IMG/VR virus record: IMGVR_UViG_3300042516_005475
Location: 166,048 to 230,047 of that record
Reading direction: 5' to 3' (one strand)
Length of the DNA stretch: 64,000 nt
Under the pieces are notes generated by a model that worked only from the letters and a program-made list of their open reading frames with translations, made no database searches and was not told where the DNA came from. Shown in pieces: positions 4,555 through 44,970 of the stretch; within the stretch, counting starts at the first letter, position 1, and each line of letters starts with the position of its first letter. The position numbers and the translations under genes were made by a program.

Positions 4555-4873
4555 GCGATCGTAGCTCAACGGTAGAGCATCGGCCTTTAATAGGAGCGCT
4601 TATAGAGTGATCTATAAGATGAACCGAGCCATATGCGGGGACCTCCTTAGAGCCTTGAGTACCGTAAGGTAAAAATCTCAAGGATTGGACAATCCGCAGG
4701 AAACCAGTAGATTAGTACGCTGTTGGTCATAAATTGGGATCCTCAGAGACTTTACGCTTGGCATCTCTAAAAGAGATGATGATAAAGTCCAGACTACAAC
4801 GGAAACGGCTAGTGAAAACTAGAGTAGTAAGTTAAGCCGGGTGTTGTGGATTCGAATTCCACCGGTCGCACCA
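4555..4873 (+). tRNA. trnK: tRNA-Lys(UUU) interrupted by a group I intron; exons 4555-4587 and 4832-4873
   Basis: Acceptor GCGATCG/CGGTCGC, D arm GCTC/GAGC, anticodon stem TCGGC/GCCGG, spliced loop CT-TTT-AA, T arm GTGGA-TTCGAAT-TCCAC, encoded ACCA end. Confidence 0.9.
4588..4831 (+). ncRNA. group I intron, 244 nt, no ORF (IC3-like)
   Basis: P ATGCGGGGAC 4633, Q AATCCGCAGG 4691, R CCTCAGAGACTTTA 4741, S GATGATAAAGTCC 4778; P7 GACTTTA/TAAAGTC; P3 CCGAGC/GCTTGG; P1 CTT/GAG; terminal G 4831. Confidence 0.92.
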
Positions 4874-5169: not shown

Positions 5170-5311
5170 TTATCTGTAGCTCAGCGGTAAGAGCAGAGTT
5201 CCTAACTATGGGTAAAGCCCTTAAAAATCTTATGTTAGGTCGTAAAATTGCCTTGTACTGATATTTTACAAGTTGTAAAAGTAGCCGTTGGTTCGATTCC
5301 AACCAGATGAA
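5170..5311 (+). ncRNA. tRNA-like RNA with a ~90 nt structured segment replacing the anticodon/variable region
   Basis: Acceptor TTATCTG/CAGATGA, TA-GCTC-AGCGGTAA-GAGC D arm, GTTGG-TTCGATT-CCAAC T arm; middle has CCTAAC/GTTAGG and CTTGTA/TACAAG. Confidence 0.7.
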
Positions 5312-21640: not shown

Positions 21641-21697
21641 CTTTTCCTGTTGCAGTTCCTGTCCGAGGCATCTATACTGAATACAGAAAATAAAATT

Positions 21698-22033
21698 ATG
21701 AACAACGACGAAGTTATTATCCACGGTGAGTGCATGGTGTTTAAGAGCTCCATCCCTCAGAAGGCTAAGAAGATGAAGACTGCTGCTCAGCCTTATGTTA
21801 TTGTGGCACCTAGCGAGACTACTGGTAACCACCACGTGGTCGACCTCAAGCCTGGTGTCGCATTCTACGAGTACGAAGACGTTCTCTTCATGGAGAACGA
21901 AGTCGAGACTACTATTCGCTGCGTGGTTGCTGATCGCCACGACGAGATTACTCTTTCTCCTGGTGTCTATGAGTTCGGCTCTCAGCAGGAGTATGACCCG
22001 TTCACTGCTCGCCTTCAGAAGGTCCGCGACTAA
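21698..22033 (+). CDS. small His-rich beta protein of the type found beside DUF6745
   Basis: IIHGE, SETTGNHHVV, HDEITLSPGVYE..QQEYDP; start moved to ATG 21698. Confidence 0.7.
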   Translation: MNNDEVIIHGECMVFKSSIPQKAKKMKTAAQPYVIVAPSETTGNHHVVDLKPGVAFYEYEDVLFMENEVETTIRCVVADRHDEITLSPGVYEFGSQQEYDPFTARLQKVRD

Positions 22034-22107: not shown

Positions 22108-22980
22108 ATGAAGATTGAAAAGCTGACGAAGAAGCAAGAGAAGGAACTCGAAGCCTTTTATAAGGAGTGTCTCGAGATTGGACGTTCTTGCGAACCTATT
22201 AATCACGAGATTGCTGAGGGTATTATCTCTGGCTTCTATAAGCGGCTCGATATGCAGGCTCCTAAGTTCGTTTACTTCCCGAGCCCTCATGCAATCCTCA
22301 AGAGCGATTCGTCTATCGACTTGAACATGTACTTTGGTGGCCAGCAATGGATTCACTGGAAGGCCTTGTACAAGTTCGCTGAGCGTATCGGTGTTGAGTT
22401 CTCTAAGGAAGACAGTCAGTTGCTTGACGAGTGGTTCAATGAGTCTAAGCATTTGCATTGGTGGTTCCCGTTTACTGATGTTTGCTACATTAGCGAGCGA
22501 CCTATTCGGTTGACTGTTAACGAGGCTGGTGCCTTGCATAACGAGAAGTTCAAGGCGATTGAGTATGCTGACGGTTGGGGTATGTATTACCTCAATGGTA
22601 TCAAGGTGCCGGAGTACCTGGTTGTTACTCCGAGCGAGGATCTTAGCATTGACTTCTTTTTGAAGGAGAAGAATGCTGATGTTAAGGCTGAGTTCGTTCG
22701 TAAGTTTGGTGTTGAGCGAATGCTCGACATGGGTAAGAAGGTTGATACTTACGAGAAGTACAAGCAGAAGGATTATCCTTACTGGCATGAGAGTCAGTAC
22801 GAGCTGTGGGATATGGCTAAGTTGTTCGAGGGTCTCGACTATCAGCCGTATGTTAAGATGGTTAATCAGACTACTGGCATCTGGCATGTTGAGGCAGTTA
22901 GTCCTAGTTGCCGTAACCTTAAGGATGCAATTAAGGAGCGGTTCGGAGGCAAAGAGATGAAGATCATCGCGATCAAGTAA
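22108..22980 (+). CDS. DUF6745-like protein
   Basis: WWFPF..VCYISERP, LHNE..KAIEYADGWG.YYLNGI.VP, NA.V..E.VRK.G.ER. Confidence 0.75.
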   Translation: MKIEKLTKKQEKELEAFYKECLEIGRSCEPINHEIAEGIISGFYKRLDMQAPKFVYFPSPHAILKSDSSIDLNMYFGGQQWIHWKALYKFAERIGVEFSKEDSQLLDEWFNESKHLHWWFPFTDVCYISERPIRLTVNEAGALHNEKFKAIEYADGWGMYYLNGIKVPEYLVVTPSEDLSIDFFLKEKNADVKAEFVRKFGVERMLDMGKKVDTYEKYKQKDYPYWHESQYELWDMAKLFEGLDYQPYVKMVNQTTGIWHVEAVSPSCRNLKDAIKERFGGKEMKIIAIK

Positions 22981-23014: not shown

Positions 23015-23434
23015 GTATGAAAGACTTAAAGATTACAAAGGCTCTAAAGTACCAATCAGCTACACTCAGAGGAGATCTTGATATTGTGCTGTTTAGACAA
23101 TTACCTGATAATTTTGCTAATCATTTGTTAGATAGGTTATCTCACAGATTACTAGATAACACACCTAGGTATGGGTATCATGAGCTGATGGAAGAACAAA
23201 ATCGTATTAAAAATGAATCAAGAGCTATACCAACAGACAATTGACTTCAGAGAAAAGACTTCCAAAAGGGTTGGTAAACAACTCTCAAGAAAGGCTTATA
23301 GGGTACTTGACGAGGTTTTGTGGGGAAATCTCTATGAAACACTCTTTTGGGGACTAGACAAAGAAATTAGAGTAAGTTTGAGGAAGGAAAAAGCTTGAGG
23401 TTCCTGTGAGGTGCCTATAGACTACTTGTAACAA

Positions 23435-28815: not shown

Positions 28816-29337
28816 ATGAGCGAACAAACTTATATGAAGCTCGGTGATAAGGTTAAGAGGCCTACTCTTAGCGCTAATAATATTAACCGCTCTAACAAGT
28901 CATTTGTTAGGATGGTTGACAGCTATCAGAAATGGAATGAGTCTATCACTGCTGATGAGCCTCGCGAGACCTATGAGAAGGACATCTTTGAGTGTCTCTT
29001 TGAACCTGACTTGGATGGTTATAATTTGGCAGAGCATCTGAAGAGTAAGGTTTATCTTGAGCCTGATGCCTCGCTTGTAGAGATTTTGGATGATATGATC
29101 TTCGTCAAGAGGGCTCTAGAAGATGATTTGATTGCTCAATGGGTAGAGGAGAACTTTTTGACTGTCCCCGAAGATGTTATCGGTAAGAAGGTTAATGGTA
29201 AGGCTGGGTTTAAGACGCTAAACGGATACTATATTACTGCTATTCATCAGAAGAGGTATCAAGTTGTTATTAGTGAATCAACAGAGAAGAAGAACAATGG
29301 CTACTTCGTAAATTACGAGACACTTGTATTTGTATGA
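28816..29337 (+). CDS. hypothetical protein
   Basis: 173 aa ORF 7 nt after TATAAT. Confidence 0.6.
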   Translation: MSEQTYMKLGDKVKRPTLSANNINRSNKSFVRMVDSYQKWNESITADEPRETYEKDIFECLFEPDLDGYNLAEHLKSKVYLEPDASLVEILDDMIFVKRALEDDLIAQWVEENFLTVPEDVIGKKVNGKAGFKTLNGYYITAIHQKRYQVVISESTEKKNNGYFVNYETLVFV

Positions 29338-30468
29338 TTGAGTCTATTAAAAAGGCTATACCTCAACCTTACTTAAGGCAGAAGATTTCTCTTGTTACAA
29401 GTATTAAACTAAATCAAAGTTGTGATATTGAGCAGGACTTGTCTACTAATATTAGAGACAATATTTGTTCTCATTTGTTCTGGGAACTTAAGAGAGAAGA
29501 TTCTAATTTCTTGCATAATGTTAATATCTATTAAAAATGCTATTCATGAGGCAGAGTCTCGGGCTTACTTTAGGCAGAACCTATCTGTTAATAACAATAT
29601 TAGAATGTATCTTAATTCTAATATTAAAAGAGACTTGTGTACTAATATCAGAGACAATCTTCATTCTCCTTTGTTCTGGGAATTGATAAGAGACTTCGAT
29701 TAATCTCAACATTAATGAATACTGCTAAAGAGTTTAGTGCTAATCATAAAATTCATACCAGACTCTATACGGATTTGCGGTTGAGTATGTTTGATGTGTT
29801 TAATTTTAATTGTTCACCAACGAGTAAAGAACTCTTAAAAAGTATATCTGATAATCTTAGACCCATTAACTTTATTAGCAATCAGATATATAGTAACTTA
29901 AATATTGAAAAATATGAATGAGATATCAATATCTATTAATAAAGAAATAATTGAAATGACTAATCAAGTTGATGTTATGATTGAAATGGCAAAAGATTCT
30001 GACAAATTAGAGAGTGAGAATTTTATTGCAAAACTAAACAATATTCCTTGGCCTGAGCCATTAGATCCTCCAACTACTACTGCTGAGGCAGAAGCCAGAC
30101 AAAGAAGGTTTGAAGATGATATCAATTAATAAAGAAATAGGTAAATACATTAATGGTTTAAAGGATTAATATGGAAGAATGTAAAGCTGCTGTACCTACG
30201 AAGAAAAACATGGGGCACTTCATACGCAAGTGGTATTATGGAGCTCTCTTTTGGATGTATTTGAACATATGGTGTCGGTATTGTTATCGCCATGTTATGC
30301 GATGGATGCATAAGTTTAATTTTCACCACACCACTGTAGTTAATATTGTAGAAGAAAAGAATGAATTGACAGGTAAACATCAACGCAAGCATTTGTGGTG
30401 TCAATGGTGTGGATTGCGAGGCGACATTTTAAAGTTTAATCATGATGAGTAATTGAATAAATAATATT

Positions 30469-31706
30469 ATGTTCAACGAATTAGCTAACTCTCTTATTCA
30501 AGAGAGTTTCCACCCAATCAGAGCTAAAGAGCGTATAAAAAAGTTAATTGAGACCCCTCAAGGAGCATTCCAATATGCTTTAAAAATTAAAAAAGGTAGA
30601 GCACCAGAAGTTGAGCCTATTATTTTAAAAAAAGCCTCTACAGCTATTCAATATGCTGCATTTATTATTAAAGGTAGATGGCCAGAGGCAGAGCCAATAA
30701 TATTAAAAAATGCTGCTACAGCTTACAATTATGCGCTTAATGTAATAGACGGTAGATGGCCAGAAGCTGAGCAAGTAATATTACAAAGCAATAATGCTTC
30801 TATCGCGTCATCTTATGCTGCGTTTGTAATAAATGGTAGATGGCCAGAGGCTGAACCAATAATTAAAGATAATCCTAGCGCTTCTCTCTCCTACGCAAAA
30901 TATTTACTAAAGGAAAGATTCCCAGCTGGAGAAAAAGCAATAAAAGAGAGCCCCGCACATGCAAAAGACTATGCTATTTTTGTTCTAAGAGATAGATGGC
31001 CTGAAGCTGAGCCTACTATTAAAAAGGATGAAGAACAATGGGAAAGTTATAAAGATTACTTTGGAATAGAGGAAGAAGATTAATATGCCATTAAAACCTA
31101 TTAATACTAAACCTAGAATAGATAAACTAAAGAAATGGCCTTATCATGCATATTATATTGCTAAAGATATTAAAAAAGGCAGATGGCCAGAAGCTGAACC
31201 TTATATCAAAAACGATGCCAGATGGGCATATTTCTATGCCAGAGACATCATCAAAGGCAGATGGCCAGAGGCTGATTCTGTGATCATGAATTCCAGATGG
31301 GCTGTAGCATACCTCACCATTATTTAATATGCCACTAAAACCTCTTAAAACTAAAGAAAGATTAAATGCTAAGATAGCTGAGATAAAATCATTACAACAT
31401 CGTTATAGTGCTGCTTCGGTCGCTAGAATGTCTTTTGAATTAGCTAATGGTATTGAAATACGCATACCAGAACTAGAACCCTTTATATTTAAAGATCATT
31501 GGGCTGCATATGAATATGTTAGATCAGTAGTAAAGAAACCTTTGCCAGAAGCTGAACCAATCATTCTAGATGACCCATGGACTGCCTTTTATTATGCTGT
31601 TAAAATTAAAAAAGAGAGATGGCCAGCAGCAGAACAAGTACTAAAAAACAACCAGTTAGAAGGTTTTTGGAACAAATATAAAGAAAAATTCAATATTAAA
31701 GACTAA
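30469..31706 (+). CDS. three tandem WPEAEP helical-repeat genes (30469-31083, 31085-31327, 31329-31706)
   Basis: ~24 aa unit A..YA..VIKGRWPEAEP.I; TAA-T-ATG junctions; TAAATA 30458-30463. Confidence 0.75.
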
Positions 31707-33313: not shown

Positions 33314-34222
33314 ATGGACCTCAACATTACCAAATCCGACTTCATCCGCGTTGCCGACGTCAAGATCAGCGATATCTTTTATCGCCGTCTTCAGACCGGC
33401 ATTACTAAGATCGACGAGTTCATGAGCGGTGGTTTCTTGCCTGGCTCTAGCTTTACTCTGGCTGCTTCGCCTGGTACTGGTAAGACTACTCTTATGCTGC
33501 AGATCCTTGAGTCTCTTGCTAAGCAAGGCTACAAGGTTGGTTACATCTCCGGTGAGGAGAATATTATGCAGGTTGCCTATACCTGTCAGCGTATCAAGGT
33601 TGAGAACGTTATGGTTCGCAACGAGACTAACATTAACGAGATTAAGAAGGTGATGCAAGACTTCGATCTTATCATCATTGACAGCTTTCAGTGCTTGACT
33701 GGCGATGTTAATATGAGCTCTGTTGAGCGTGAGAAGTATATCCTCAAAGAGCTGTTGCCTGAGGCTAAGTCTACTGAGTGTGTCATTGGCTTCATTATGC
33801 ATATGACTAAGGATGGTAAGAACATGAAGGGTTCTACTTTGGTTCCGCATTCTGTTGACGCTAACCTTACTCTCGATATTGACGAAGAAGGTGATGACGG
33901 CACTCGCGTTCTTGGTACTCAGAAGAATCGCTTTGGCTCTCTCAACCAGGTCAGCTTGTACATGGGTTCTACTGGTTATGACTTTGATGCCAAGATTGAG
34001 GTGTTCAATGCTGAGAAGAAGGCTGCCCCTAAGAAGGACCGCAAGGCTGCTGACATGGAGAAGATTATGAATCTCGGCAATGAGTTTACTATTGAGCAGG
34101 TTATGCCTATTGCTAACGGAGACTATTGCCGCGCTCAGTACTTGCTGCGTAACTTGCTCAGTAGCAACAAGCTGACTAAGAGCGGTCGCGGCAATGAGGC
34201 TAAGTTTCAGGTCATTAACTAA
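33314..34222 (+). CDS. radA: RadA/Sms-like RecA-family ATPase lacking N-terminal Zn finger and Lon-like domain
   Basis: GGFLPGS, ASPGTGKTT, YISGEE, IIIDSFQ, PHSVD, KNRFG. Confidence 0.85.
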   Translation: MDLNITKSDFIRVADVKISDIFYRRLQTGITKIDEFMSGGFLPGSSFTLAASPGTGKTTLMLQILESLAKQGYKVGYISGEENIMQVAYTCQRIKVENVMVRNETNINEIKKVMQDFDLIIIDSFQCLTGDVNMSSVEREKYILKELLPEAKSTECVIGFIMHMTKDGKNMKGSTLVPHSVDANLTLDIDEEGDDGTRVLGTQKNRFGSLNQVSLYMGSTGYDFDAKIEVFNAEKKAAPKKDRKAADMEKIMNLGNEFTIEQVMPIANGDYCRAQYLLRNLLSSNKLTKSGRGNEAKFQVIN

Positions 34223-34255: not shown

Positions 34256-34657
34256 ATGAAACGTAATAACAAAGCTGGTTTTACTCTCGTTGAGCTGATG
34301 ATTAGTGTCGTTATCTTTTTCATCGTTATCTCAACCATTATTGGTATTAGTGGCATTATTATTGGCAAGAGCGACGGTAAGCGAGTTGGTACTATTACTA
34401 AATTCAGTCACAAGGGCTTGTTTGTTAAGAGCTACGAAGGCGAACTCAATATGGGTGGTTTTCGCGATCGTACTGACAGTGAAGGTAAGCATAGCGTTGT
34501 TGGCAACGTTTGGGAGTTTAGCTGCAGCAATCCTGAGGTTGCTAAGAAGTTGGATAATTTGCTTGGCAAGCAAGTCGTTATTCAGTATCATCAGAGCTTC
34601 AAAGGGTTCAAGATGGATACTAGCTATGATGTTGTTAGCGTAGAGGAAGTGAAATAA
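34256..34657 (+). CDS. prepilin-type N-terminal domain fused to an OB-like domain
   Basis: KAG|FTLVELMISVVIFFIV; G.RVG.ITKFSHKG..VKSYEGEL C-terminal domain. Confidence 0.75.
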   Translation: MKRNNKAGFTLVELMISVVIFFIVISTIIGISGIIIGKSDGKRVGTITKFSHKGLFVKSYEGELNMGGFRDRTDSEGKHSVVGNVWEFSCSNPEVAKKLDNLLGKQVVIQYHQSFKGFKMDTSYDVVSVEEVK

Positions 34658-37600
34658 ATGAGACTCAAAGAGACTGGCGAATACAAAGAGCCAATTAGTC
34701 TCAAGTATGGCCAGAGCTTGTTCGTAGATATGTGGGATAAGTATTACCTCTACGAAGAATGCTCTGGTACATCTTTTGACTTTAGATTGAATAGATACTT
34801 AGAAGATAGGTCTCGTAGTATAAATTACTTTAATTCTAACTATATTAAGATGATTATAAAATGGAATCGTTAAAGAATAAATTCTACAACGAGTTGGATC
34901 TTAAATTAAGTGCCAATTTAACTAATCGTATGGATAATAAGTTGGCAAATAATTTTTATGGTTATTTGCTAAACAAGCTCAATTATAGTTTGTATTGGCA
35001 GCTTGATTTAGTTTACTGTAATCGAATTGCTGACGAGATACACTTATCCTTAACAGATGAAAAATGAGGCTCAAAATATGTCTATTATTCTAATGTTAGA
35101 AGACAAGTTAGTAGAAAGAGTTCGTAAAGATGTTCTCAAAAAGAGTATCAAGATAGACCCAAAAGTTGACGATCTACTTTATATTAATTTGAGTAGATCT
35201 ATTGTATCGTTAGATATACAATTAAGCGATGAGTTGATGGGATGGTAGAGATACTATGAAAAACATGAAGGGTAAATCTATAAAAGGTAAAATGATAATG
35301 AGACAGATGGCTGTCAAAGATTCTTTCTTTAATAATATCTCTAAACAATTAGGTAGAGGGTACAAGTGGAAGATTTATATTGATTTTGGTAATGATTTGT
35401 TTATTATAGAAGAAGCTAGTGATGAGATACATAAGAGCCTTTCTATAGAAAACTACAAAAAGAAGCTATGAAGCCAATCAAGAAAAAATTATTTGCATTG
35501 TACTTAGATAACCGATTGTATCAGGTTTTAAGTACGCAAATGTTTTTTGATGTTCATTGGGATATTTCAGGAAAATTGTTTAATGATTTGCATGATAAAA
35601 TGTTAACGGTTAGTCAAAGAGTTGAAAATAGACTAGTCAAAGAGAGGCGAATAGGAGAAGTATGACATCCATTAAAGGCAAACTACTAGAGCCAGATAAT
35701 AATGCTCTCTATAGTCTCGATTTAATCTCTAAGATTAATAATTTGTACAATAATATTCCAAAACATATAGATGGCCTTTTTCTTTTTAGGCAGCTATCAT
35801 TGATGTTGTCAGAAGAAATTAACGATGGCTTAAAAGATGAAATCAAGAAAAGAAAACTCTCTAAAAGAAAAACTATTTAACAAACTGCGAATAAAATTAG
35901 AGAGTAATCTGCTCTCTACCGTCTGTTCTGATCCTATTATCATCGACAATTTCAAAATAATCAGGAGACATAATTTGAGGCTAGCAATTAGGATTCGCAA
36001 TAGTACACTTATACCATATGTATATAAAGAATAAAGAGTCTATAATTTGTGCATTAAATCCTGTTTTTATTTCTACTATATTGGGCAGAGCGTTGAATGT
36101 AAAAGTTGACTGTAAACTTATAAGTGCATTACACTTTGCCTTGTCTGAAGAGCTTTTAAGTAAAGTTAGGATTAATATTTCTCAAGGAATATCGGACGAA
36201 TTATATGAAGAAAAAAAGCAAATCAATTAGTAAAAAAATTCTCCTCAATCAATTTAAGTTTCAAGATCAATTAGAAAATACAAGGCAGAAGTACTTTCAT
36301 AAAGAATTACGTATAGACTTCGAGATAAGCCTTTATAATAGGTTATATGTTCAGCTGACTTATGACTACCTGTAAAGTAAACATTCGTAAAGTGCTTTTA
36401 AGTCAAGTTAAAAAGCTGAAGCTTAACCTTGAAATTAATACATCTAAACGATTAGATAATAGTTTATATTGGGATCTCACTAAAAGAGAGAACCACATGT
36501 ATATTATTTTTTATCTACGTCCCAAAGCCATTTACAATGAACAGCTTAAAAAAGATTTATATTGATTCACTTGAACAAAATTTATTTCGTAAGACACAAA
36601 ATACTCTTGATAGAAAGATTGTGTCTGAAATGATTAAAAATATTAATCTATCTTTAGTGTGGGCTGTGCATGATGAGCTATATATAAACCCAATTAAACG
36701 TGAAAATGTCTCTAAGATCAAAAATTAATCGCTCTCTGGCTAGTCCATGTACTGATGATAGATTTAAAGAACTAAACAAAATAAGCACTAAAATTATTGC
36801 CACTTTACATACTCAATTGTATAATAATATCCAACAAACATTAGATCATCAAATATTCGTGGGACTATTAGGTATAAAACATGACATCAACAAAGAATAA
36901 AATTGTTAGTAGCGTTAGTCTTCACCTTGACACTTGTTTGTATAAACAAACAAATCAAAAAGATTATTTAAAATTGGTTGGTACTTTAGACGATAATTTA
37001 CATGAATTGTTACTTAATCAAATGTGCCTAAAGATTCATAGCAAACTCTTGTTTAACAGAGAAAACTTTATATACCTAAACTTTGAGGTGTTCTAGCAAA
37101 TGTGCCTAGATCTTCATAACAAACTCTTATTTAACAGTGAAACCTATATACCTTAAACTTTGCGGCACTCTATCTAAGTACATTAACAAACATGTTACTC
37201 TAGATAGATATTATGTCAGCCCTTATTATGGCAGCCCTTATTTTATTACCAAATATGATATTTCAAATAGTTCTTATAAACAATTGAAACATAAATTTGA
37301 TGATGAACTATTCGATGTAACCTACAACAATATTAACAATGCCATTAAGAAAGAACTGCTTAAAACTATTCATCGCTAATATTTTTGAAAAGGTGAATCA
37401 TGACAACCTGAAGGATATTTGCCCTAAACTTCTCTCCGAAATTTTAGTTGACTATGAGGTCAAGGTAGCCCATAATATAGCCAATCACATAGAGTTAGCA
37501 ACCTTTAGCCATATTATTGAGGATCATGAACTCGTGCGCTGGTAAAGTATCAGTCAGAAAAGAAATTAATCGGGTGATATATAGTACTTACGCTATATCT

Positions 37601-40600
37601 AAGTTGACAAAATCAAAGAGAGATGTTATAGAATCAAAACTATTCTACAATACAGACTTACCCTACAATACTGTACATTGGCATTTATATCATGAGCTTA
37701 AGACAGGAAATTGAAATGAGAATGTTAGAGAGTAAGCGTAATATGTGTGCTCATTACACATTGAATGCTTTCTCAAATGCTAAGCCTAAAAACAAAATAG
37801 AGCAAAAAATATGGGGAGATAATTCTATTTCTGATCTTATTCAATTGCTAGAATACAATTTACGAGAACATCTATATGACTAAACAAAAAAGACAACCAG
37901 TAAATTTCTCTTGCTTCGATAACCTATACGTGACTTCTGAAAAGTTGTTGCTTAATTCTTTGTATTATACTTTAAATGATAACATTCAAATAAAGCTTTA
38001 TAATAACATATATAATAATTTTAATCGCAATTTAAGGACTCAACTAAAAAATGAAGGCTATCGCTCGTAAATTAACTTTTTTAAATGGGACCCCTTATCG
38101 AGTTAAATGTGGTAAGAAGTTGTTCTATTATTTAGAATTAATATTTCATAAAAAATTAGGACAAGAATCTGTGAGTAGAATTAATGTACAATTAGTAAAT
38201 GAATTACTAAACAATGAAAAGCGTTAAAATTCTAATTATAACTAATGCATTTTTTCATGCTAGTATTAGAAATGCTGTCGTCTCTAAATTAAAAGATGAA
38301 GCTATATCAGATCTAGAAGTTAAAATGTGGACTGACCTATATGGATTAATATGGTCTAATGTTTATGAACCTTTAAGCAGTGAACTCAATAAAAACTGAA
38401 ATAACTAATAAAGTACTTTATCATTGGAGTATAAAGTATAATAAGATTCTCTCATCTGATGCTCTCATTAGTTATTGGAGAAATAATCCATTTGCCTTTG
38501 TTAACGATGCCTTGTTCGTTGGCTTAAATGATAAACAAAATGAAGAAATCTGATAACATCAAGAAACAACTACAAGGGTTTAAAGACACAATCTACAAGG
38601 TCTACTACATGAAACAAACATCTTCTTTCAATAGGTGTATTGACTTATATGGTGAACTCAGCCATAATCTTAACAGCAATTTAACTAATCACACTGAGAG
38701 GCAATTAAAAAATGAAAGAAGAAACGCACATTTTAAAACTGGAAAAAGAGCGCAGAAGGCTCTATACTAGAATAAACAATAGCTGTGGAGTAGTTACAGC
38801 TATGTTGCAAACACCCTTTTATTATAAAGAGCTCTATCAACCAATAGAATTTGCAATGATCATAGAGAATGAATTAGAAAATGAAATCGATTAGACTAAA
38901 AATGATAGTTAAAATGCACTTCAGCAGAGATACTCGAATTAAAATTACTCCTGAAACTGTAGAAAAACTATACAACCCCTTATGGGCTAATCTACAAGTT
39001 AACATCTCACGAAATTTAGCCAATAAATTGATATTCAAAAATATTTTAGAAGACTATGAAAAATAAAGAGGTTCTCCATAAAATGAATGAGCAACGCAAT
39101 TGGGCTATTGGTAGATGCAATCCTATTATTGATAAAATTATTAACCGAGAGATTTTACTAAATAGTTTTGTAGATTTTAGTTTTCAAATGCGGTCGCTTA
39201 ATGTTAATGTAATGAGAGATTTGTTAAATGAAACCTAAAACCCTCAGATTTAAAATACAAGATCAAATCAATGATAGCTTCTGTACTACCCGAACTCTGG
39301 GCAGAAACGATAAGTGGGAAGAATTAGATAGTACTTTGTTATTTTTCTTATATTATGAGTTAGAGCATATTATTCAGCATTCTTTATCAGAGGAGTTAAA
39401 TGAAGCCAAAATATCTTAGACACAAAATAAACGAGAAATTACATGCTCATCGTTTTAGAATCATTTTACATGAGCAAATAATAGATTTGTCTAGGCAAGA
39501 TTTATATAGAAAGTTAGCTAACCCATTGTATGATAATAGCCTTGAGGATACAATAGGGTGGGAATTGAGAAAACAAATAAAGAATGAAATCAAAAAACAT
39601 TAGACAAAAAATACAAGAGAACTTATTTGATCTTCGTTTTAGAATTGCCTTACAAGAGCAAATAATAGACTTGCTTAAAGATCAATTAATTAAAAAGTTA
39701 GCTAATCCATTGTATACTAATAGCCTTGAGGATATAATAGACTCTGAACTTAGAAAACAAATACTGAATGAAGCCAATTAAAACTAGTTTAAACGTACTT
39801 TATCTTTACCATTCATTGACAGAATTGAGTACTATTGTTCGTAACAAGTTATCCAATGAGCTTTATCACCCTTTATTTGTTAATATTGATAGGGGCATTA
39901 GCATGATAAAGAGGAGAGAACTTAAAAAATGAAGCCAATTAAAGATAAACTTAGAGAAAAGCTATTCTATAACTGTTATTATAGATTTAGCAATGAGTAC
40001 TATAAAAAGGTATCGTATGGATGCTATGTTAGGGTGTCAGGCAAACTAAACATTGAACTCAAAGAAAAATGTGATGAGGTAAATTATCAAGTAAGTGAAC
40101 AATTACTCTGGAGCAATGAAAACAAAAAGAAACTTATATTTTAACATATCCAATAAGGCAGTAGTTATGGGTCAAAAATTACACCTCAGTGTGAGTAAAC
40201 AAACTAACTTAGAATACTTTCAACCAGTTGAAGTTAAACTAAATTGTGCTTTGCATAAAAACTTAGAGGCTCAATTGTTCTACGTTATAAAAGACTCATT
40301 AGTTCATCATAAAACAATTTCAACATAAATGAAACCTTTAACTAAAGAAATACATTCAAAATTGATTTGTAAATTAGAAACAAAATTGAATAGACCATAT
40401 TATAGTAACCTAAAAAACGAGCCAAGATGGAAACTACAAAATGCATTTAATGTTGTTTATAATGACCTAGACCAAATAAACAAAAGGTTAGAACACTTCT
40501 GAATGCTTATAATATTATCTATGACTTTAATCACTCATAAAATAATGGAAAGGCTAGTGAGCAAAATGGAAATGAATCTGTATAGAGCCATGTATTACTC

Positions 40601-40927
40601 TCTCAAAAACAAATGTTACACTCGCTTTCAAAACCAATTCAACTCCGAATTGTATCACCTTATACACAATAGATTAAACTTCTCCATTAGGAGCAACTTA
40701 AGAGAAGAATGAAACCATTAACAGTTAGCATAATTAATAAACTATACAATGAATTGGAAACTAATTTGTATAATGCCTTGTATTGGAACACTAAAGCTAA
40801 TGCATATACCGCTTTACAATCAAGACTCTTTGCTGGGTTATATATCGAGTTGAATAATAGATTAAACGAAACTGTTGATAATAACCTCTTTGATGAGCAA
40901 TTAAAACTTCATAACCATACCAATTAA
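34658..40927 (+). other. tandem array of 30+ translationally coupled ~55-80 aa helical mini-genes
   Basis: Continuous overlapping ORFs, many starting MK(P/S)(I/L)K.K(L/I), with L..xLYxxL periodicity and ATGA-type overlaps. Confidence 0.7.
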
Positions 40928-40965: not shown

Positions 40966-42260
40966 ATGTCTCTTAAACCATTAAAGACTAAAGAGCGATT
41001 AGATGCCTTGAAGAACAATCCAAAGGCATTATTAGCTTTTTGCAAAGATGTATTAAAGGCTCCATGGCCAGAGGCTGAACCATACATCTTAAAAGATACT
41101 ATGGTTGCTATGCATTATGCCTATCATGTTAAACAGAAGCTATGGCCTGAGTTAGAAAATATACTAGATGGTACTAGATATATGCCAATGTATAACTGGA
41201 ACATGAGATATTTTACCTATTAATATGCCTCTTAAATCAATCAAACTAAAAGATAGATTACAAAAGAAAAAGAAAGATCCTTTTGAAATCATTAATTTTT
41301 GCAGATACACTATAATGGGTCGCTGGCCAGAAGTTGAACCTTTTTTACTAAAACATAAAGATCCTTTTTGGGCATTGTTATATGCCAGAGACATCATCAA
41401 AGGGCGATGGCCAGAAGCAGAACCTCTTATCATGAAAGAGGCATACATGGCATACAAGTACGCTAGAGATGTAATCAAAGGACCTTGGCCTGAAGCCGAG
41501 AAACATATTAAACGAGATGCTGCTGCCTGGAGCGAATATACAAAAAAGGTACTAAACAACTCATAACATATGCCCCTAAAACCAATAAAGACTAAAGAGA
41601 GATTTGAAAATCTTATAAAAACTCCTAGAGGTGTTGTTACATATGCTGAGCATAAAAAAACGCCTGTACCTGATCTTGAGCATGTAATATTACTAGATGA
41701 CTTGGCAATCTATTGGTATGCCTATTATGTTTTACACCGCAGATGGCCAAAGGGAGAACAGATATTGTTGAGAGGAGCTTTTCCTATATGGGGACCAAAT
41801 GCCTATGTTCTAAGCAGATATGCAGAAAATATAATAAAAAATCGTTGGCCAGAGGCTGAACCATTTATTAAAAAAGATTCATCAGAATGGGAAAATTACT
41901 CAAACAACTTTAACATTCAAGACTAATATGCCCCTCAAACCAATAAAGACTAAAGAAAGATTAGAACAAGTAAAGAAAGATGCAGGATTAGCATATTATT
42001 TTGCTAAAGATGTAATCAAGGATCGTTGGCCAGAAGTTGAACCTATTATTATGCAGGATGCCTGGTGGGCATGGAAGTATGCTGTAGACGTTATTAGAGC
42101 ACCATGGCCAGAGGCTGAACATGTTATCTCTAAAAAATCTATGCCTGCTTATAATTATGCTGTATTGGTAATAAAAGATAAATGGCCACCTGGAGAAAAA
42201 GCTATTAATAAATTAGCCTACTCCAAAAAAGGATATAAACATTTTGTAGACAATTTATAA
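40966..42260 (+). CDS. four tandem WPEAEP helical-repeat genes (40966, 41225, 41570, 41928)
   Basis: M(P/S)LK(P/S)(I/L)K.K(E/D)R N-termini, RWPEAEP.I repeats, TAAATA 40954-40959. Confidence 0.75.
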
Positions 42261-43558: not shown

Positions 43559-44036
43559 ATGGAAGAAACTGAAACTGAACCTACTATTACGATTGTGCTT
43601 GGAGCTGACATGAAGCCTGCCAGAAAGCCTATTGAGTTTCACCGTGTGTTGGATAGTGATGAGACGTTTGGATCGGTCTATGAAGAATATCCTTGTCTTT
43701 GGAAGTACATTGAGCTTATCTGTAAGGAGTATCTTGGAACCAAGACATTAGACTTGATGTATGCCTACGACAATCCTAAAGATCGCTCTAGAGGTAGGCT
43801 CTTTCTTGGTCAGTGGAACGATGGCTATGTAGAGCGCTAATATGACGTCCAAATATAATAGCTTAGACTATGAGCTAGAGTCTCGACTAAGGACAAGATT
43901 GTTTGATGCTACTGAAAAGAAACTAAACATGAATCTATTTGAAGTGTTGTCAAAGTCTTATAGCAATAGGCTATATGTAAACAATACAATTGCATTTCAC
44001 AATCCACTATGGGATGAACTTAAACAAAGCAACTAA
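43559..44036 (+). other. two small hypothetical ORFs (43559-43840, 43842-44036)
   Basis: Co-oriented ORFs; the second resembles the mini-gene array. Confidence 0.5.
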
Positions 44037-44239: not shown

Positions 44240-44491
44240 AAACGGGGCCGTGAAACACAAACGGGTCTCAGACACCCCCAGGGGTCTAGGACACAAACGG
44301 GGATATAGAACCAAGGGGCTAGAATCCACATATAGTAGAGAAGGCAAGCTAATAGGTAGGAACCGCATGCTCCAAACTTTTGGCAAAATTTTTTTTGGAT
44401 TTTCTATATGGATTTTCCTATAGGGCCGCAATTGCTCCAAACTTTTGGCAAATTTTTTTGGAATTTTTCTATGGATTTTCTGTATGGCCCC
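44240..44491. repeat. non-coding repeat region: three AAACGGG units and two ~65-bp tandem copies
   Basis: AAACGGG at 44240, 44259, 44295; TGCTCCAAACTTTTGGCAAA...TGGATTTT from 44368 and 44433. Confidence 0.75.
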
Positions 44492-44970
44492 TCTTTTGCT
44501 CTCTGCTGCCTCTCTGTAACATTGATATCTGCTTCGTTGTTTCTCTGAAAGTCTGATGTTCTGATATTCTGATGATATGTGAGTCTGTTTATTATTGAGT
44601 CTGAATCTCTCTTATTCTCGGCTTGTGATGCCTTCGGCACATAGGAGAATCTTTTTTATCAGGTAAGATAAGTAATAGTATGTATAGTGCTCCTAGTGGA
44701 ATAGTGATGAACGATTATGACCATGAGCCAATGTCATTAATTGCGCAAAAGTGGTTGGGTAAAAACAGGCGCAAGAAGAAAAAGAGAGTTTCTGAATCTT
44801 TTGCTAATTATTATCGTCGATATAATGCCTAATAATTGTGAATGACAATAGTTGGTTAATATTGGGACATGAATATAGTTTAATTAACTCGGTAGAGACA
44901 AGGTAGTATATACTATGGATCTGGGTTTGAGCTATAAAAAAAATCTTATTCAGACTAAATATTAGTAGAT

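What the first reader, a model, noticed from the sequence alone, without database searches (positions are those of the whole stretch)
34658..40927. 6.3-kb accordion of 30+ overlapping helical mini-genes
Seen: back-to-back 55-80 aa ORFs, AT-rich, overlapping stop/start, recurrent MK(P/S)(I/L)KxK(L/I) starts and L-xxx-LY-xx-L periodicity, yet highly divergent. One pair is a recent duplicate (39400 and 39584 share RFRI.L.EQIIDL...KLANPLY.NSLED.I..ELRKQI.NE). Satellites at 23017-23398, 29334-29921 and 43842. Inference: a diversifying library on one amphipathic-helix scaffold, e.g. inhibitors or decoys of host defence sensors.
Basis: partly seen in the sequence, partly recalled or inferred. Interest (0 to 1): 0.75.

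Follow-up and report, generated by a model that had tools for sequence, protein, structure and literature searches.

The report
Tandem array of single-helix mini-genes
A 230-kb lake phage carries 34 back-to-back, overlapping genes for ~65-residue one-helix proteins with a leucine every fourth residue; similar arrays occur in other phages next to DUF6745 genes, and their function is unknown but plausibly lies in phage-host conflict.

Summary
Window 34658-40927 holds 34 contiguous + strand ORFs of 54-80 aa. Shuffled sequence gives about 4 such ORFs.

They are coding. All 27 orthologue pairs with a relative 17% diverged in DNA stay open, against about 4 expected under neutrality. dN/dS is 0.55 in the called frame and 0.81 and 1.18 in the other two frames.

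About 26-31 of the 34, plus 2 clear and 2-4 weaker satellites, form one very divergent family. The hydrophobic period is exactly 4.0 residues, not 3.5-3.6. AlphaFold2 predicts one continuous helix.

26 of 33 junctions put the next start codon in the +1 frame inside the previous gene's tail. This explains the recurrent MKxIK starts and suggests relay translation.

It is not an active accordion. Five related genomes have colinear arrays of 33-36 old units. Turnover is by whole-unit cassettes, including one exact 184-nt unit.

Arrays of the same design, with cleaner (x-x-Q-L)n repeats, occur in three unrelated phage contigs. They sit next to DUF6745 genes, and in other phages the DUF6745 protein carries the repeat as an internal insert.

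Function is untested. The closest analogue is the tunable tetrapeptide-repeat counter-defence protein gp54 of mycobacteriophage Tweety.

The parts
33314..34222 (+). KaiC/RadA/DnaB-like P-loop ATPase, conserved left flank and probable first gene of the transcription unit
   Evidence: Pfam PF06745 1.8e-15; 91% identical orthologue flanks the array in L002; dN/dS 0.12
34256..34657 (+). 133-aa protein with a prepilin-type N-terminal methylation motif, directly upstream of the array
   Evidence: PF07963 1.3e-07; conserved in L002, L010, L012
34658..40927 (+). Array of 34 tandem mini-genes (m01-m34), 54-80 aa each
   Evidence: coding shown
34658..34873 (+). m01, 71 aa, outlier (no family signal)
   Evidence: hhalign 7.2 with orthologue profile
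34861..35067 (+). m02, 68 aa, family member
   Evidence: hhalign 79.1
35057..35248 (+). m03, 63 aa, weak member; absent from L002 and L012
   Evidence: hhalign 18.3
35256..35471 (+). m04, 71 aa, outlier
   Evidence: hhalign 12.3 / 10.7
35468..35665 (+). m05, 65 aa, member, MKPIKKKL start
   Evidence: hhalign 59.2
35662..35880 (+). m06, 72 aa, member
   Evidence: hhalign 26.6
35837..36034 (+). m07, 65 aa, member
   Evidence: hhalign 35.8
36018..36230 (+). m08, 70 aa, member
   Evidence: hhalign 39.7
36205..36375 (+). m09, 56 aa, weak member
   Evidence: hhalign 14.0; 93% identical orthologue in L002
36362..36565 (+). m10, 67 aa, weak member
   Evidence: hhalign 17.1
36537..36728 (+). m11, 63 aa, member (pairs with m02)
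   Evidence: phmmer 8.9e-05 to m02; hhalign 23.0
36700..36900 (+). m12, 66 aa, member (GTG start as listed; an ATG lies 2 codons in)
   Evidence: hhalign 37.4
36881..37096 (+). m13, 71 aa, member
   Evidence: hhalign 48.1
37137..37379 (+). m14, 80 aa, member; follows the only gap (40 nt)
   Evidence: hhalign 22.6
37339..37545 (+). m15, 68 aa, marginal
   Evidence: hhalign 12.1 with orthologue profile; 94% identical orthologue in L002
37517..37714 (+). m16, 65 aa, marginal
   Evidence: hhalign 15.7 with orthologue profile
37692..37883 (+). m17, 63 aa, outlier
   Evidence: hhalign 11.0
37876..38070 (+). m18, 64 aa, member; duplicated in L002 and L012
   Evidence: hhalign 43.8
38051..38227 (+). 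m19, 58 aa, weak member
   Evidence: hhalign 16.0
38214..38399 (+). m20, 61 aa, member
   Evidence: hhalign 37.9
38380..38553 (+). m21, 57 aa, weak member
   Evidence: hhalign 20.0
38528..38770 (+). m22, 80 aa, weak member, most basic (net +11)
   Evidence: hhalign 15.3
38712..38894 (+). m23, 60 aa, marginal
   Evidence: hhalign 11.8; 93% identical orthologue in L002
38881..39066 (+). m24, 61 aa, weak member; canonical 14-nt junction
   Evidence: hhalign 18.7
39056..39238 (+). m25, 60 aa, marginal; duplicated in L002
   Evidence: hhalign 12.4 with orthologue profile
39228..39419 (+). m26, 63 aa, weak member
   Evidence: hhalign 14.5
39400..39603 (+). m27, 67 aa, member; paralogue of m28
   Evidence: phmmer 6.4e-22 to m28; hhalign 24.7
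39584..39781 (+). m28, 65 aa; exact 184-nt cassette present here but absent from 99%-identical genomes L010 and L011 and from a lake contig
39768..39932 (+). m29, 54 aa, member
   Evidence: hhalign 42.6
39929..40144 (+). m30, 71 aa, member
   Evidence: hhalign 62.7
40095..40328 (+). m31, 77 aa as listed (GTG start; true start may lie further in), member
   Evidence: hhalign 39.2
40329..40502 (+). m32, 57 aa, member
   Evidence: hhalign 54.7
40503..40712 (+). m33, 69 aa, member
   Evidence: hhalign 75.5
40709..40927 (+). m34, 72 aa, best family representative; predicted single helix, residues 4-71
   Evidence: hhalign 115.5; AF2 pLDDT 93.7
40966..42260 (+). Four genes of a ~35-aa 'RWPEAEP' repeat family, directly downstream; their N-termini (MPLKPIKTKERL) resemble those of the minis
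   Evidence: no Pfam or PHROG name
21650..22033 (+). 127-aa conserved gene that precedes the DUF6745 gene here and in L024
22108..22980 (+). DUF6745 protein without a repeat insert. In relatives from other phages the (x-x-L-x)n repeat is inserted at about residue 70
   Evidence: PF20530 3.6e-14; alignment A3; AF2 pLDDT 88, dropping to 59 at residues 71-80
23017..23244 (+). Satellite mini-gene, borderline member, directly after the DUF6745 gene
   Evidence: hhalign 13.6; position syntenic with the L024 array
23213..23398 (+). Satellite mini-gene, clear member
   Evidence: jackhmmer 6e-13; hhalign 35.6
29334..29921 (+). Three small ORFs (29334-29534, 29422-29703, 29715-29921): weak or borderline members, upstream of the second RWPEAEP cluster
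   Evidence: hhalign 17.9, 15.4, 12.1
30469..31706 (+). Three further RWPEAEP-repeat genes
43842..44036 (+). Satellite mini-gene, clear member (duplicated in L002)
   Evidence: jackhmmer 1e-18; hhalign 68.0

Best explanation
WHAT IT IS (confidence about 0.85). The region is a translated tandem multigene family in an uncultured 230-kb freshwater phage. Each unit encodes a ~65-residue, mostly basic, soluble protein with three parts: a short N-terminal motif (MKxIKxKL), about 10-13 tetrads with Leu/Ile at every fourth residue, and a short 'L-x-N-E' tail. Each protein is predicted to be one uninterrupted alpha-helix about 10 nm long.

HOW IT IS MADE (inferred, about 0.6). The ATPase gene, the pilin-like gene, the 34 minis and 4 RWPEAEP genes form one + strand unit without internal gaps. 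In most junctions the next ATG lies in the +1 frame inside the previous gene's tail: the codons AAT GAA (N-E) read A-ATG-AA in that frame. The previous stop lies inside codons 4-5 of the next gene (ATT AAA or ATT AGA). A terminating ribosome could therefore re-start a few bases upstream and pass down the array like a relay. The phage uses no Shine-Dalgarno sites, so A-rich unstructured starts probably also allow direct initiation. This dual coding accounts for much of the recurrent N-terminus.

HOW IT EVOLVES (shown). Units are old, individually conserved orthologues under weak purifying selection. Change is slow birth and death of whole units at the conserved junctions.

WHAT IT DOES (inferred, about 0.35-0.4). 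The minis are free-standing versions of the L-every-4 repeat. In many other phages that repeat sits as a variable-length insert inside DUF6745 proteins. In three lineages mini arrays lie directly beside a DUF6745 gene that lacks the insert. In the cleaner arrays two tetrad positions (Q-L) are fixed, and the other two are filled with Y, D, N, R, H, W and S. I read the family as a panel of rigid helical rods with a fixed Leu spine and varied faces. These rods would bind protein partners in phage-host conflict (counter-defence or host takeover), alone or together with the DUF6745 protein. This is by analogy with the tunable tetrapeptide-repeat counter-defence protein gp54 of phage Tweety.

The single confidence value given for this explanation (0.4) refers to the whole statement including the functional part.
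For: Coding:
- 34 long ORFs against about 4 in shuffles.
- All 27 orthologue pairs are intact at 16.9% DNA divergence. Neutral simulation gives a mean of 4.1 and a maximum of 12 of 27.
- dN/dS is 0.545 (CI 0.48-0.63) in frame, against 0.81 and 1.18 out of frame.
- Leu is the best-conserved residue (0.87), and the tetrad phase 0 position is the best-conserved phase.

Family and fold; period 4.0 with z about 14; single helix with pLDDT 93.7; pI mostly 9-10 and no hydrophobic segments.

Junctions. No Shine-Dalgarno use: 11 of 130 large ORFs against a 10% background.

Evolution:
- Colinear arrays of 33-36 units in the window, L002, L010, L011 and L012.
- An exact 184-nt unit is the only structural difference between 99%-identical genomes, and it is also skipped in a lake contig.

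Wider class:
- L015 has 25 minis. L016 has about 30 minis with 17-nt overlaps, next to a DUF6745-family gene (hhalign probability 99.7). L024 has the same 114-aa gene, a DUF6745 gene, then 8 minis with 29-nt overlaps and an MNFTKPIKTKL start.
- The tetrad has two fixed and two variable positions.
- The profile hits 3-6 stretches in DUF6745 proteins that carry (xxQL)n or (SSLx)n inserts.

Analogue: Tweety gp54 (PMC2884959; PMC9262239).
Against: - There is no evidence of transcription, translation or any activity. No RNA run was listed.
- Selection is weak, and several units have dN/dS of 0.8-1.2.
- In this window the tetrad is degenerate. The fixed/variable contrast seen in L015, L016 and L024 is much weaker here, and variable-face positions are only slightly less conserved than the Leu spine.
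- Similarity to the DUF6745 inserts could be convergence of a simple periodic repeat rather than homology.
- The main array lies about 12 kb from this genome's DUF6745 gene.
- A period of 4.0 fits no known helical packing, so the single-helix model may be incomplete.
- Tweety gp54 is not homologous, and its repeat is A-A-x-x between two domains, which the minis lack.
Confidence: 0.4

Rival explanations
1. Packaged internal proteins. The minis, and the RWPEAEP proteins that share their N-terminal K-P-I-K-x-K motif, would be targeted into the capsid by that motif. They would then be injected with the DNA, like the small basic internal proteins of T4 that share a capsid-targeting sequence (own knowledge).
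For: Two unrelated families share the N-terminal motif, and it is almost confined to N-termini in this genome (9 N-terminal occurrences). RWPEAEP genes do not overlap their upstream neighbour, so dual coding cannot explain the motif there. The minis are small and mostly basic.
Against: No virion proteome is available. No protease cleavage motif was established. The array lies in a block of replication-type and accessory genes, not among head genes. The L016 and L015 arrays have different N-termini (MENLNKKI, MNKQL). A-rich starts are also expected for initiation without Shine-Dalgarno sites.
Confidence: 0.12
2. Nucleic-acid-binding or regulatory proteins. This would be a lineage-specific expansion of small basic helices acting on DNA or RNA as structural binders, chaperones or specific regulators, comparable to the ~35-copy zinc-ribbon expansion of Bacillus phage G (PMC7824862).
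For: Most units have pI 9-10 and net charge +4 to +11. They are co-transcribed with a RecA/KaiC-like ATPase. Expansion to about 35 copies in a jumbo phage has a precedent.
Against: There is no known nucleic-acid-binding motif and no Pfam or PHROG hit. About a quarter of the units are neutral or acidic. The conserved feature is a Leu spine, not a basic face.
Confidence: 0.12
3. By-product without a protein function. 12-nt periodic, AT-rich DNA expanded by unequal recombination. The ORFs would be passengers, and any role would lie at the DNA or RNA level, or there would be none.
For: 12-nt periodic coding DNA keeps more than one frame open in L015 and L016. Selection is weak (dN/dS 0.55). No expression data are available. 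The locus is dispensable in related phages.
Against: dN/dS is frame-specific. 27 of 27 ORFs are intact against about 4 expected under neutrality. Starts and stops are preserved at every junction in five genomes. In this window only the called frame is open (34 runs against 7 on the other strand), and no DNA-level repeat remains except one pair.
Confidence: 0.07
4. Subunits of a phage-built assembly. The rods would co-assemble with each other, or inside the superhelical RWPEAEP repeat proteins, into a structure such as a scaffold, filament or ruler, rather than targeting host proteins.
For: A Leu ridge that winds once per ~36 residues (period 4.0) would need a partner that wraps around it. RWPEAEP repeat genes follow both mini clusters in the window. 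If relay translation operates, products would be roughly equimolar.
Against: RWPEAEP genes lie elsewhere in L002, and none was found in the 54-kb L024 fragment, although that fragment is only 15% complete. Structural parts are rarely this variable in copy number between close relatives.
Confidence: 0.15

Closest known systems
Mycobacteriophage Tweety gp54 (tetrapeptide-repeat counter-defence protein; PMC2884959, PMC9262239)
   Same: Both are phage proteins built on a 4-residue repeat with two fixed and two variable positions. The variable positions are rich in G/W/S/Y-type residues. Repeat number differs between related phages, and in Tweety it tunes escape from the Phrann gp29/gp30 defence. 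The DUF6745 proteins with an (xxQL)n or (SSLx)n insert copy this domain-repeat-domain layout.
   Different: There is no sequence relation (no Pfam hit; hhalign probability 0.2). Tweety's repeat is A-A-x-x in one 374-aa protein. Here the repeat is x-x-(Q)-L, and in the window it stands alone as about 34 separate one-helix genes.
DUF6745 (PF20530) proteins carrying an L-every-4 repeat insert
   Same: The window's family profile matches 3-6 stretches in each of these proteins (E down to 6e-19). A DUF6745 gene is the direct neighbour of mini arrays in the window, L016 and L024.
   Different: The minis contain no DUF6745 domain. The similarity is confined to a simple periodic repeat and could be convergent. 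DUF6745 itself has no known function or solved analogue.
Poxvirus-type 'genomic accordion' (transient amplification of a host-range gene; own knowledge)
   Same: Both involve tandem copies of a small viral gene with copy-number differences between close relatives.
   Different: Accordion copies are near-identical and recent. Here the paralogues are so diverged that only one pair is visible as DNA repeats, at 77% identity. The array is colinear across genomes about 9-17% diverged in DNA.
Lineage-specific expansions in jumbo phages, e.g. ~35 zinc-ribbon genes in Bacillus phage G (PMC7824862)
   Same: Both show a similar copy number, small proteins, a jumbo phage and unknown roles.
   Different: The fold differs (single helix, no metal site). 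The units here are strictly tandem, with a chain of out-of-frame overlaps.
T4 internal proteins with a shared capsid-targeting sequence (own knowledge)
   Same: Both are small, mostly basic proteins that share a short N-terminal motif but are otherwise diverse, encoded at variable loci.
   Different: T4 has three, not dozens. Here there is no evidence of packaging or proteolytic processing, and the N-terminal motif is partly explained by overlap with the upstream gene.
Canonical coiled coils (heptad or hendecad repeats)
   Same: Both are long helices with regularly spaced leucines.
   Different: The period here is 4.0, with no power at 3.5-3.67. On a standard helix such a stripe winds steeply right-handed, which no described coiled coil does (own knowledge).

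Membership tests
Genomic accordion (recent tandem gene amplification) | Copies are near-identical in DNA | tested here: not met
   Only one pair is detectable, at 77-78% identity. All others are below detection.
Genomic accordion (recent tandem gene amplification) | Copy number changes quickly between close isolates | tested here: inconclusive
   One 184-nt unit differs between 99%-identical genomes. Otherwise there are 33-36 colinear units across genomes about 9-17% diverged in DNA.
Tweety gp54-like tetrapeptide-repeat counter-defence proteins | Sequence homology to gp54 | tested here: not met
   No Pfam hit for gp54. gp54 compared with the DUF6745 family (not with the minis) gives hhalign probability 0.2. 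The repeat is A-A-x-x against x-x-Q-L.
Tweety gp54-like tetrapeptide-repeat counter-defence proteins | Unique N- and C-terminal domains flank the repeat | tested here: not met
   The minis have only about 10 N-terminal and 8 C-terminal residues. The feature is met by the DUF6745 relatives.
Tweety gp54-like tetrapeptide-repeat counter-defence proteins | Two fixed and two variable positions per tetrad | tested here: inconclusive
   Clear in L015 and L016 (Q 57%, L 59-76%; other positions have entropy 3.3-3.6 bits). Degenerate in the window.
Tweety gp54-like tetrapeptide-repeat counter-defence proteins | Neutralises a defence system | not testable with these tools
   Needs a cultured host and phage.
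DUF6745 (PF20530) | Match to the Pfam model above its cut-off | tested here: not met
   The four minis scanned (m02, m05, m27, m34) have no Pfam hit at E of 0.1 or below, apart from one sub-threshold chance hit for m27. The neighbouring gene 22108-22980 does match (53 bits).
Heptad coiled coil / classical amphipathic helix | Hydrophobic period of 3.5-3.6 | tested here: not met
   z is -1 to -2 at 3.5-3.6, and z is 13.8 at 4.0.
T4-type internal proteins | Shared N-terminal targeting peptide | tested here: inconclusive
   A K-P-I-K-type N-terminus is shared by the minis and the RWPEAEP family, but it is also forced by gene overlap.
T4-type internal proteins | Present in virions and processed by the head protease | not testable with these tools
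   No virion proteome is available.
RiPP precursor arrays (e.g. prochlorosin-type; own knowledge) | Conserved leader, a Cys/Ser/Thr-rich variable core, and an adjacent modifying enzyme | tested here: not met
   Cys is 1.2% of residues. No modifying-enzyme family was found among the neighbours scanned. The core is a regular helix repeat.

The most novel reading that the evidence does not exclude
Phages of several lineages would carry a previously undescribed system: arrays of 8-36 relay-translated genes for rigid one-helix 'tetrad' proteins with a fixed (Q)-L spine and two free positions per turn. These would be a built-in panel of binders that works with, or evolved from, the variable-length repeat of DUF6745 proteins to neutralise host defence or takeover targets. 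Whole units would be swapped as cassettes at the conserved out-of-frame junctions.
Probability: 0.2. Interest if true: 0.85.

Novelty: new variant of a known kind. Interest (0 to 1): 0.62.

Why it matters
If the minis are made and bind targets, they would be a natural minimal binder scaffold: one helix with two variable positions per turn. They would also be a new class of phage accessory genes, tied to the widespread but uncharacterised DUF6745 family. No paper in the searched library mentions DUF6745.

The 23-step chain of +1-frame overlaps is an unusually clean natural test bed for termination-reinitiation in a phage that uses no Shine-Dalgarno sites.

The 4.0-residue leucine period is a structural puzzle, because no described helical packing explains it.

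Ecologically, the phage recurs in many lake metagenomes, so population data on cassette turnover are within reach.

Tried and rejected
- Megablast of the array against 50,697 phage records found no match.
- tblastn of a large neighbouring protein found only a 33%-identity fragment in a 595-kb uncultured phage.
With the ATPase it found nothing in viral contigs. The relatives came instead from the protein database and the look-up of encoding contigs.
- Pairwise phmmer alone links only 9 of 561 pairs, so iteration and profiles were needed.
- Pfam, PHROGs and PDB gave nothing for the minis, the RWPEAEP family or the 127-aa neighbour.
- Fold searches with the DUF6745 model found only other DUF6745 predictions. 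No solved analogue was found.
- No RNA run was listed.
- A test of whether indels are multiples of three was uninformative. Many 1-2 nt gaps were probably alignment noise.
- The DNA pattern (CARTTA-N6)x4 in IMG/VR mostly hit other tetrapeptide repeats in large proteins, so it is not a prevalence estimate.
- The last word-indexed search, with the broad alignment A5, returned only 18 proteins, so the true spread of the class remains unknown.
- Readings rejected: a polyprotein made by serial frameshifting (it would need +1 shifts at every junction, there is no slippery motif, and each unit has its own ATG and N-terminal motif); stop-codon reassignment (frames differ between units, and all three stop codons are used); genes on the minus strand (no minus-strand ORF over 56 aa in the ORF listing; 7 stop-free runs of at least 54 codons, the longest 73, against 34 on the + strand).

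Full report
**Source.** The window is the last 64 kb of a 230,047-bp IMG/VR virus record that is estimated to be complete. The same sequence is held by at least 24 lake-water metagenome runs. No cultured relative was found.

- Between 34658 and 40927 the + strand carries 34 ORFs of 54-80 aa. They tile the region without any gap over 40 nt.
- The region has 34 stop-free runs of at least 54 codons on the + strand. Shuffles give a mean of 3.9 (maximum 9), and the - strand has 7. The region is about 30% GC.

**Are they genes?** A relative (L002; 232-kb contig; flanking ATPase 91% identical) has a syntenic array.
- 27 units are reciprocal best hits at 49-94% protein identity.
- At the observed 16.9% DNA divergence, neutral mutation would leave about 4 of 27 ORFs without a new stop (maximum 12 in 2000 trials). 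All 27 are open.
- dN/dS is 0.545 (bootstrap CI 0.48-0.63) in the called frame, against 0.81 and 1.18 in the two other frames. The flanking genes give 0.12 and 0.28.
- The units are therefore protein-coding and under weak purifying selection.
- No RNA run could be listed, so expression itself is not shown.

**Are they one family?**
- Plain pairwise comparison links few of them.
- Iterated profiles join 16-19 array ORFs plus 23213-23398 and 43842-44036. There is no false hit among 1045 six-frame ORFs of the whole genome.
- Against the family profile, 26 of 34 single sequences exceed the 99th percentile of 795 other small ORFs.
- With orthologue profiles, every unit except m01, m04 and m17 exceeds all controls.
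- No members lie in the other 166 kb of the genome.

**What do the proteins look like?**
- Hydrophobic residues recur with a period of exactly 4.0 (z about 14). There is nothing at 3.5-3.6.
- AlphaFold2, run on a 62-sequence alignment, gives a single helix over residues 4-71 with pLDDT 93.7.
- The proteins are hydrophilic and mostly basic, with no membrane segment.
- Between orthologues, Leu is the best-conserved residue (0.87). The Leu phase is the best-conserved tetrad position (0.77 against 0.66-0.72).
- On an ideal helix a period of 4.0 makes the Leu ridge wind right-handed about once per 36 residues. This is my own geometry and was not tested. It matches no described coiled coil.

**Junction anatomy.**
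- 26 of 33 junctions overlap by 3n+2 nt, and 23 of these are consecutive, so each gene is in the +1 frame of the one before.
- The next ATG is formed by the previous gene's tail codons AAT GAA (N-E). The previous stop lies in the next gene's codons 4-5, ATT AAA or ATT AGA.
- This dual coding explains both the 'L-x-N-E' tails and much of the MK(P/S)IK start.
- The phage shows no Shine-Dalgarno signal. 11 of 130 large ORFs have one, against a 10% background. From general knowledge this fits a Bacteroidota-type host.
- Translation by termination-reinitiation along the array is therefore plausible, but it is inferred.
- No internal terminator or gap separates the ATPase (33314), the pilin-like gene (34256), the minis and the four RWPEAEP genes (to 42260).

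**Dynamics.**
- Arrays in five genomes are colinear. The window, L010 and L011 are 99% identical, L012 about 91% and L002 about 85%. They hold 33-36 units, with occasional loss, gain or duplication of whole units.
- The only structural difference between the window and the 99%-identical L010 and L011 is one exact 184-nt unit, m28. A contig from another lake run skips the same 184 nt.
- m28 is only 77% identical to its neighbour m27. This is therefore cassette loss or import, not a fresh duplication.
- Phages whose ATPase is 85%, 61% or 50% identical carry other genes at this place.
- The locus is thus an accessory region with slow birth and death, not an active accordion.

**A wider class.** A profile search of 1.8 billion representative proteins gave 75 hits.
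- The short hits are orthologues from this clade, plus a few distinct minis.
- The top hits are 340-720-aa proteins, each matched in 3-6 stretches. Most are DUF6745 proteins with a central (x-x-Q-L)n or E-L-Y-N-type repeat.
- Following two of the distinct minis led to contigs with the same design. L015 is 5.4 kb and consists of nothing but 25 minis. L016 comes from a 275-kb phage and has about 30 minis with 17-nt overlaps.
- A DNA pattern scan added L024, with 8 minis, 29-nt overlaps and an MNFTKPIKTKL start.
- In these arrays the tetrad is Q (57%), then L (59-76%), then two free positions rich in D, Y, N, R, H, W and S.
- The window's units align to them end to end but are far more degenerate.

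**Link to DUF6745.**
- The window's own DUF6745 gene (22108-22980) lacks the repeat. It is followed at once by the satellites 23017-23398.
- L024 has the same three-part module: a homologue of 21650-22033, then a DUF6745 gene, then 8 minis.
- In L016 the array abuts a DUF6745-family gene (hhalign probability 99.7).
- In the family alignment the repeat insert enters at about residue 70 of the window's protein. There the AF2 model (pLDDT 88, pTM 0.80) dips to pLDDT 59.
- A spring-water siphovirus has an (S-S-L-x)n insert at the same place.
- DUF6745 has no solved analogue and no literature in the searched library.

**Function.** Nothing here tests it.
- The nearest described case is Tweety gp54. 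It is a phage protein with 40-48 A-A-x-x tetrads between two domains, and its repeat number tunes escape from a prophage defence (PMC2884959, PMC9262239).
- It is an analogue only, not a homologue.
- My preferred reading is a panel of helical rods that bind partners in phage-host conflict, possibly together with DUF6745. I put this at roughly 0.35-0.4.
- The rivals are packaged internal proteins, nucleic-acid binders, parts of a phage-built assembly, and functionless by-products. All remain open and are listed with their tests.

**Verdict.** The 'one scaffold' idea holds. 'Accordion' and 'diversifying' do not hold as stated. The anti-defence role is plausible but untested. The design has four distinctive features: stand-alone period-4 helices, long relay-style arrays, recurrence in unrelated phages, and a neighbourhood link with DUF6745. 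I could not find it described anywhere in the searched literature.

Noticed in passing
window 4577-4812 and 5170-5311: A group I intron (RF00028, 70.9 bits) and, about 360 nt downstream, a tRNA match spread over 142 nt. ARAGORN called no tRNA in the window.
   Followed up: no
window 30469-31706 and 40966-42260: Seven genes of an unnamed family built from ~35-residue repeats ending in R-W-P-E-A-E-P. There is no Pfam or PHROG name. Both clusters sit just downstream of a mini-gene cluster. The N-termini (MPLKPIKTKERL) resemble those of the minis although these genes do not overlap their neighbours. In L002 the family lies upstream of the ATPase instead.
   Followed up: partly
window 34256-34657: A 133-aa phage protein with a prepilin-type N-terminal methylation motif (PF07963). 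It is conserved next to the KaiC/RadA-like ATPase in all relatives that carry the array.
   Followed up: no
whole genome G000: There is no Shine-Dalgarno enrichment upstream of 130 large ORFs (8% against a 10% background), and G is depleted before starts. This suggests a host group that initiates without Shine-Dalgarno sites, such as Bacteroidota.
   Followed up: partly
L015 and L016 (whole arrays): The +1 frame of the (x-Q-L-x)n coding DNA is also open. It reads as hydrophobic (L/I/V)-I-N-F repeats and was sometimes called as 120-130-aa 'membrane proteins'. This is a by-product of 12-nt periodic DNA.
   Followed up: partly
L018-L137 (IMG/VR loci): Many large viral proteins, including some from giant-virus MAGs, carry other tetrapeptide repeats (T-G-N-V / T-G-D-V, V-T-D-T, N-C-N-x) encoded by the same 12-nt periodic DNA pattern.
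   Followed up: no
L004/L005 1-7726: A relative whose ATPase is 61% identical has four tandem carbamoyltransferase genes plus ThyX upstream of the ATPase, and methyl- and glycosyltransferases where the window has the array.
   Followed up: no
window 39037-39070: Contigs from three lake runs diverge from the window exactly at the m24/m25 junction, with loose ends on both sides. This points to co-occurring strains with a different unit at that position.
   Followed up: no
window 44380-44640: Short internal duplication of an F-L-D/E-F-x-Y-G-F-S-like ORF segment in a gene-poor stretch between the last satellite and the minus-strand structural genes.
   Followed up: no
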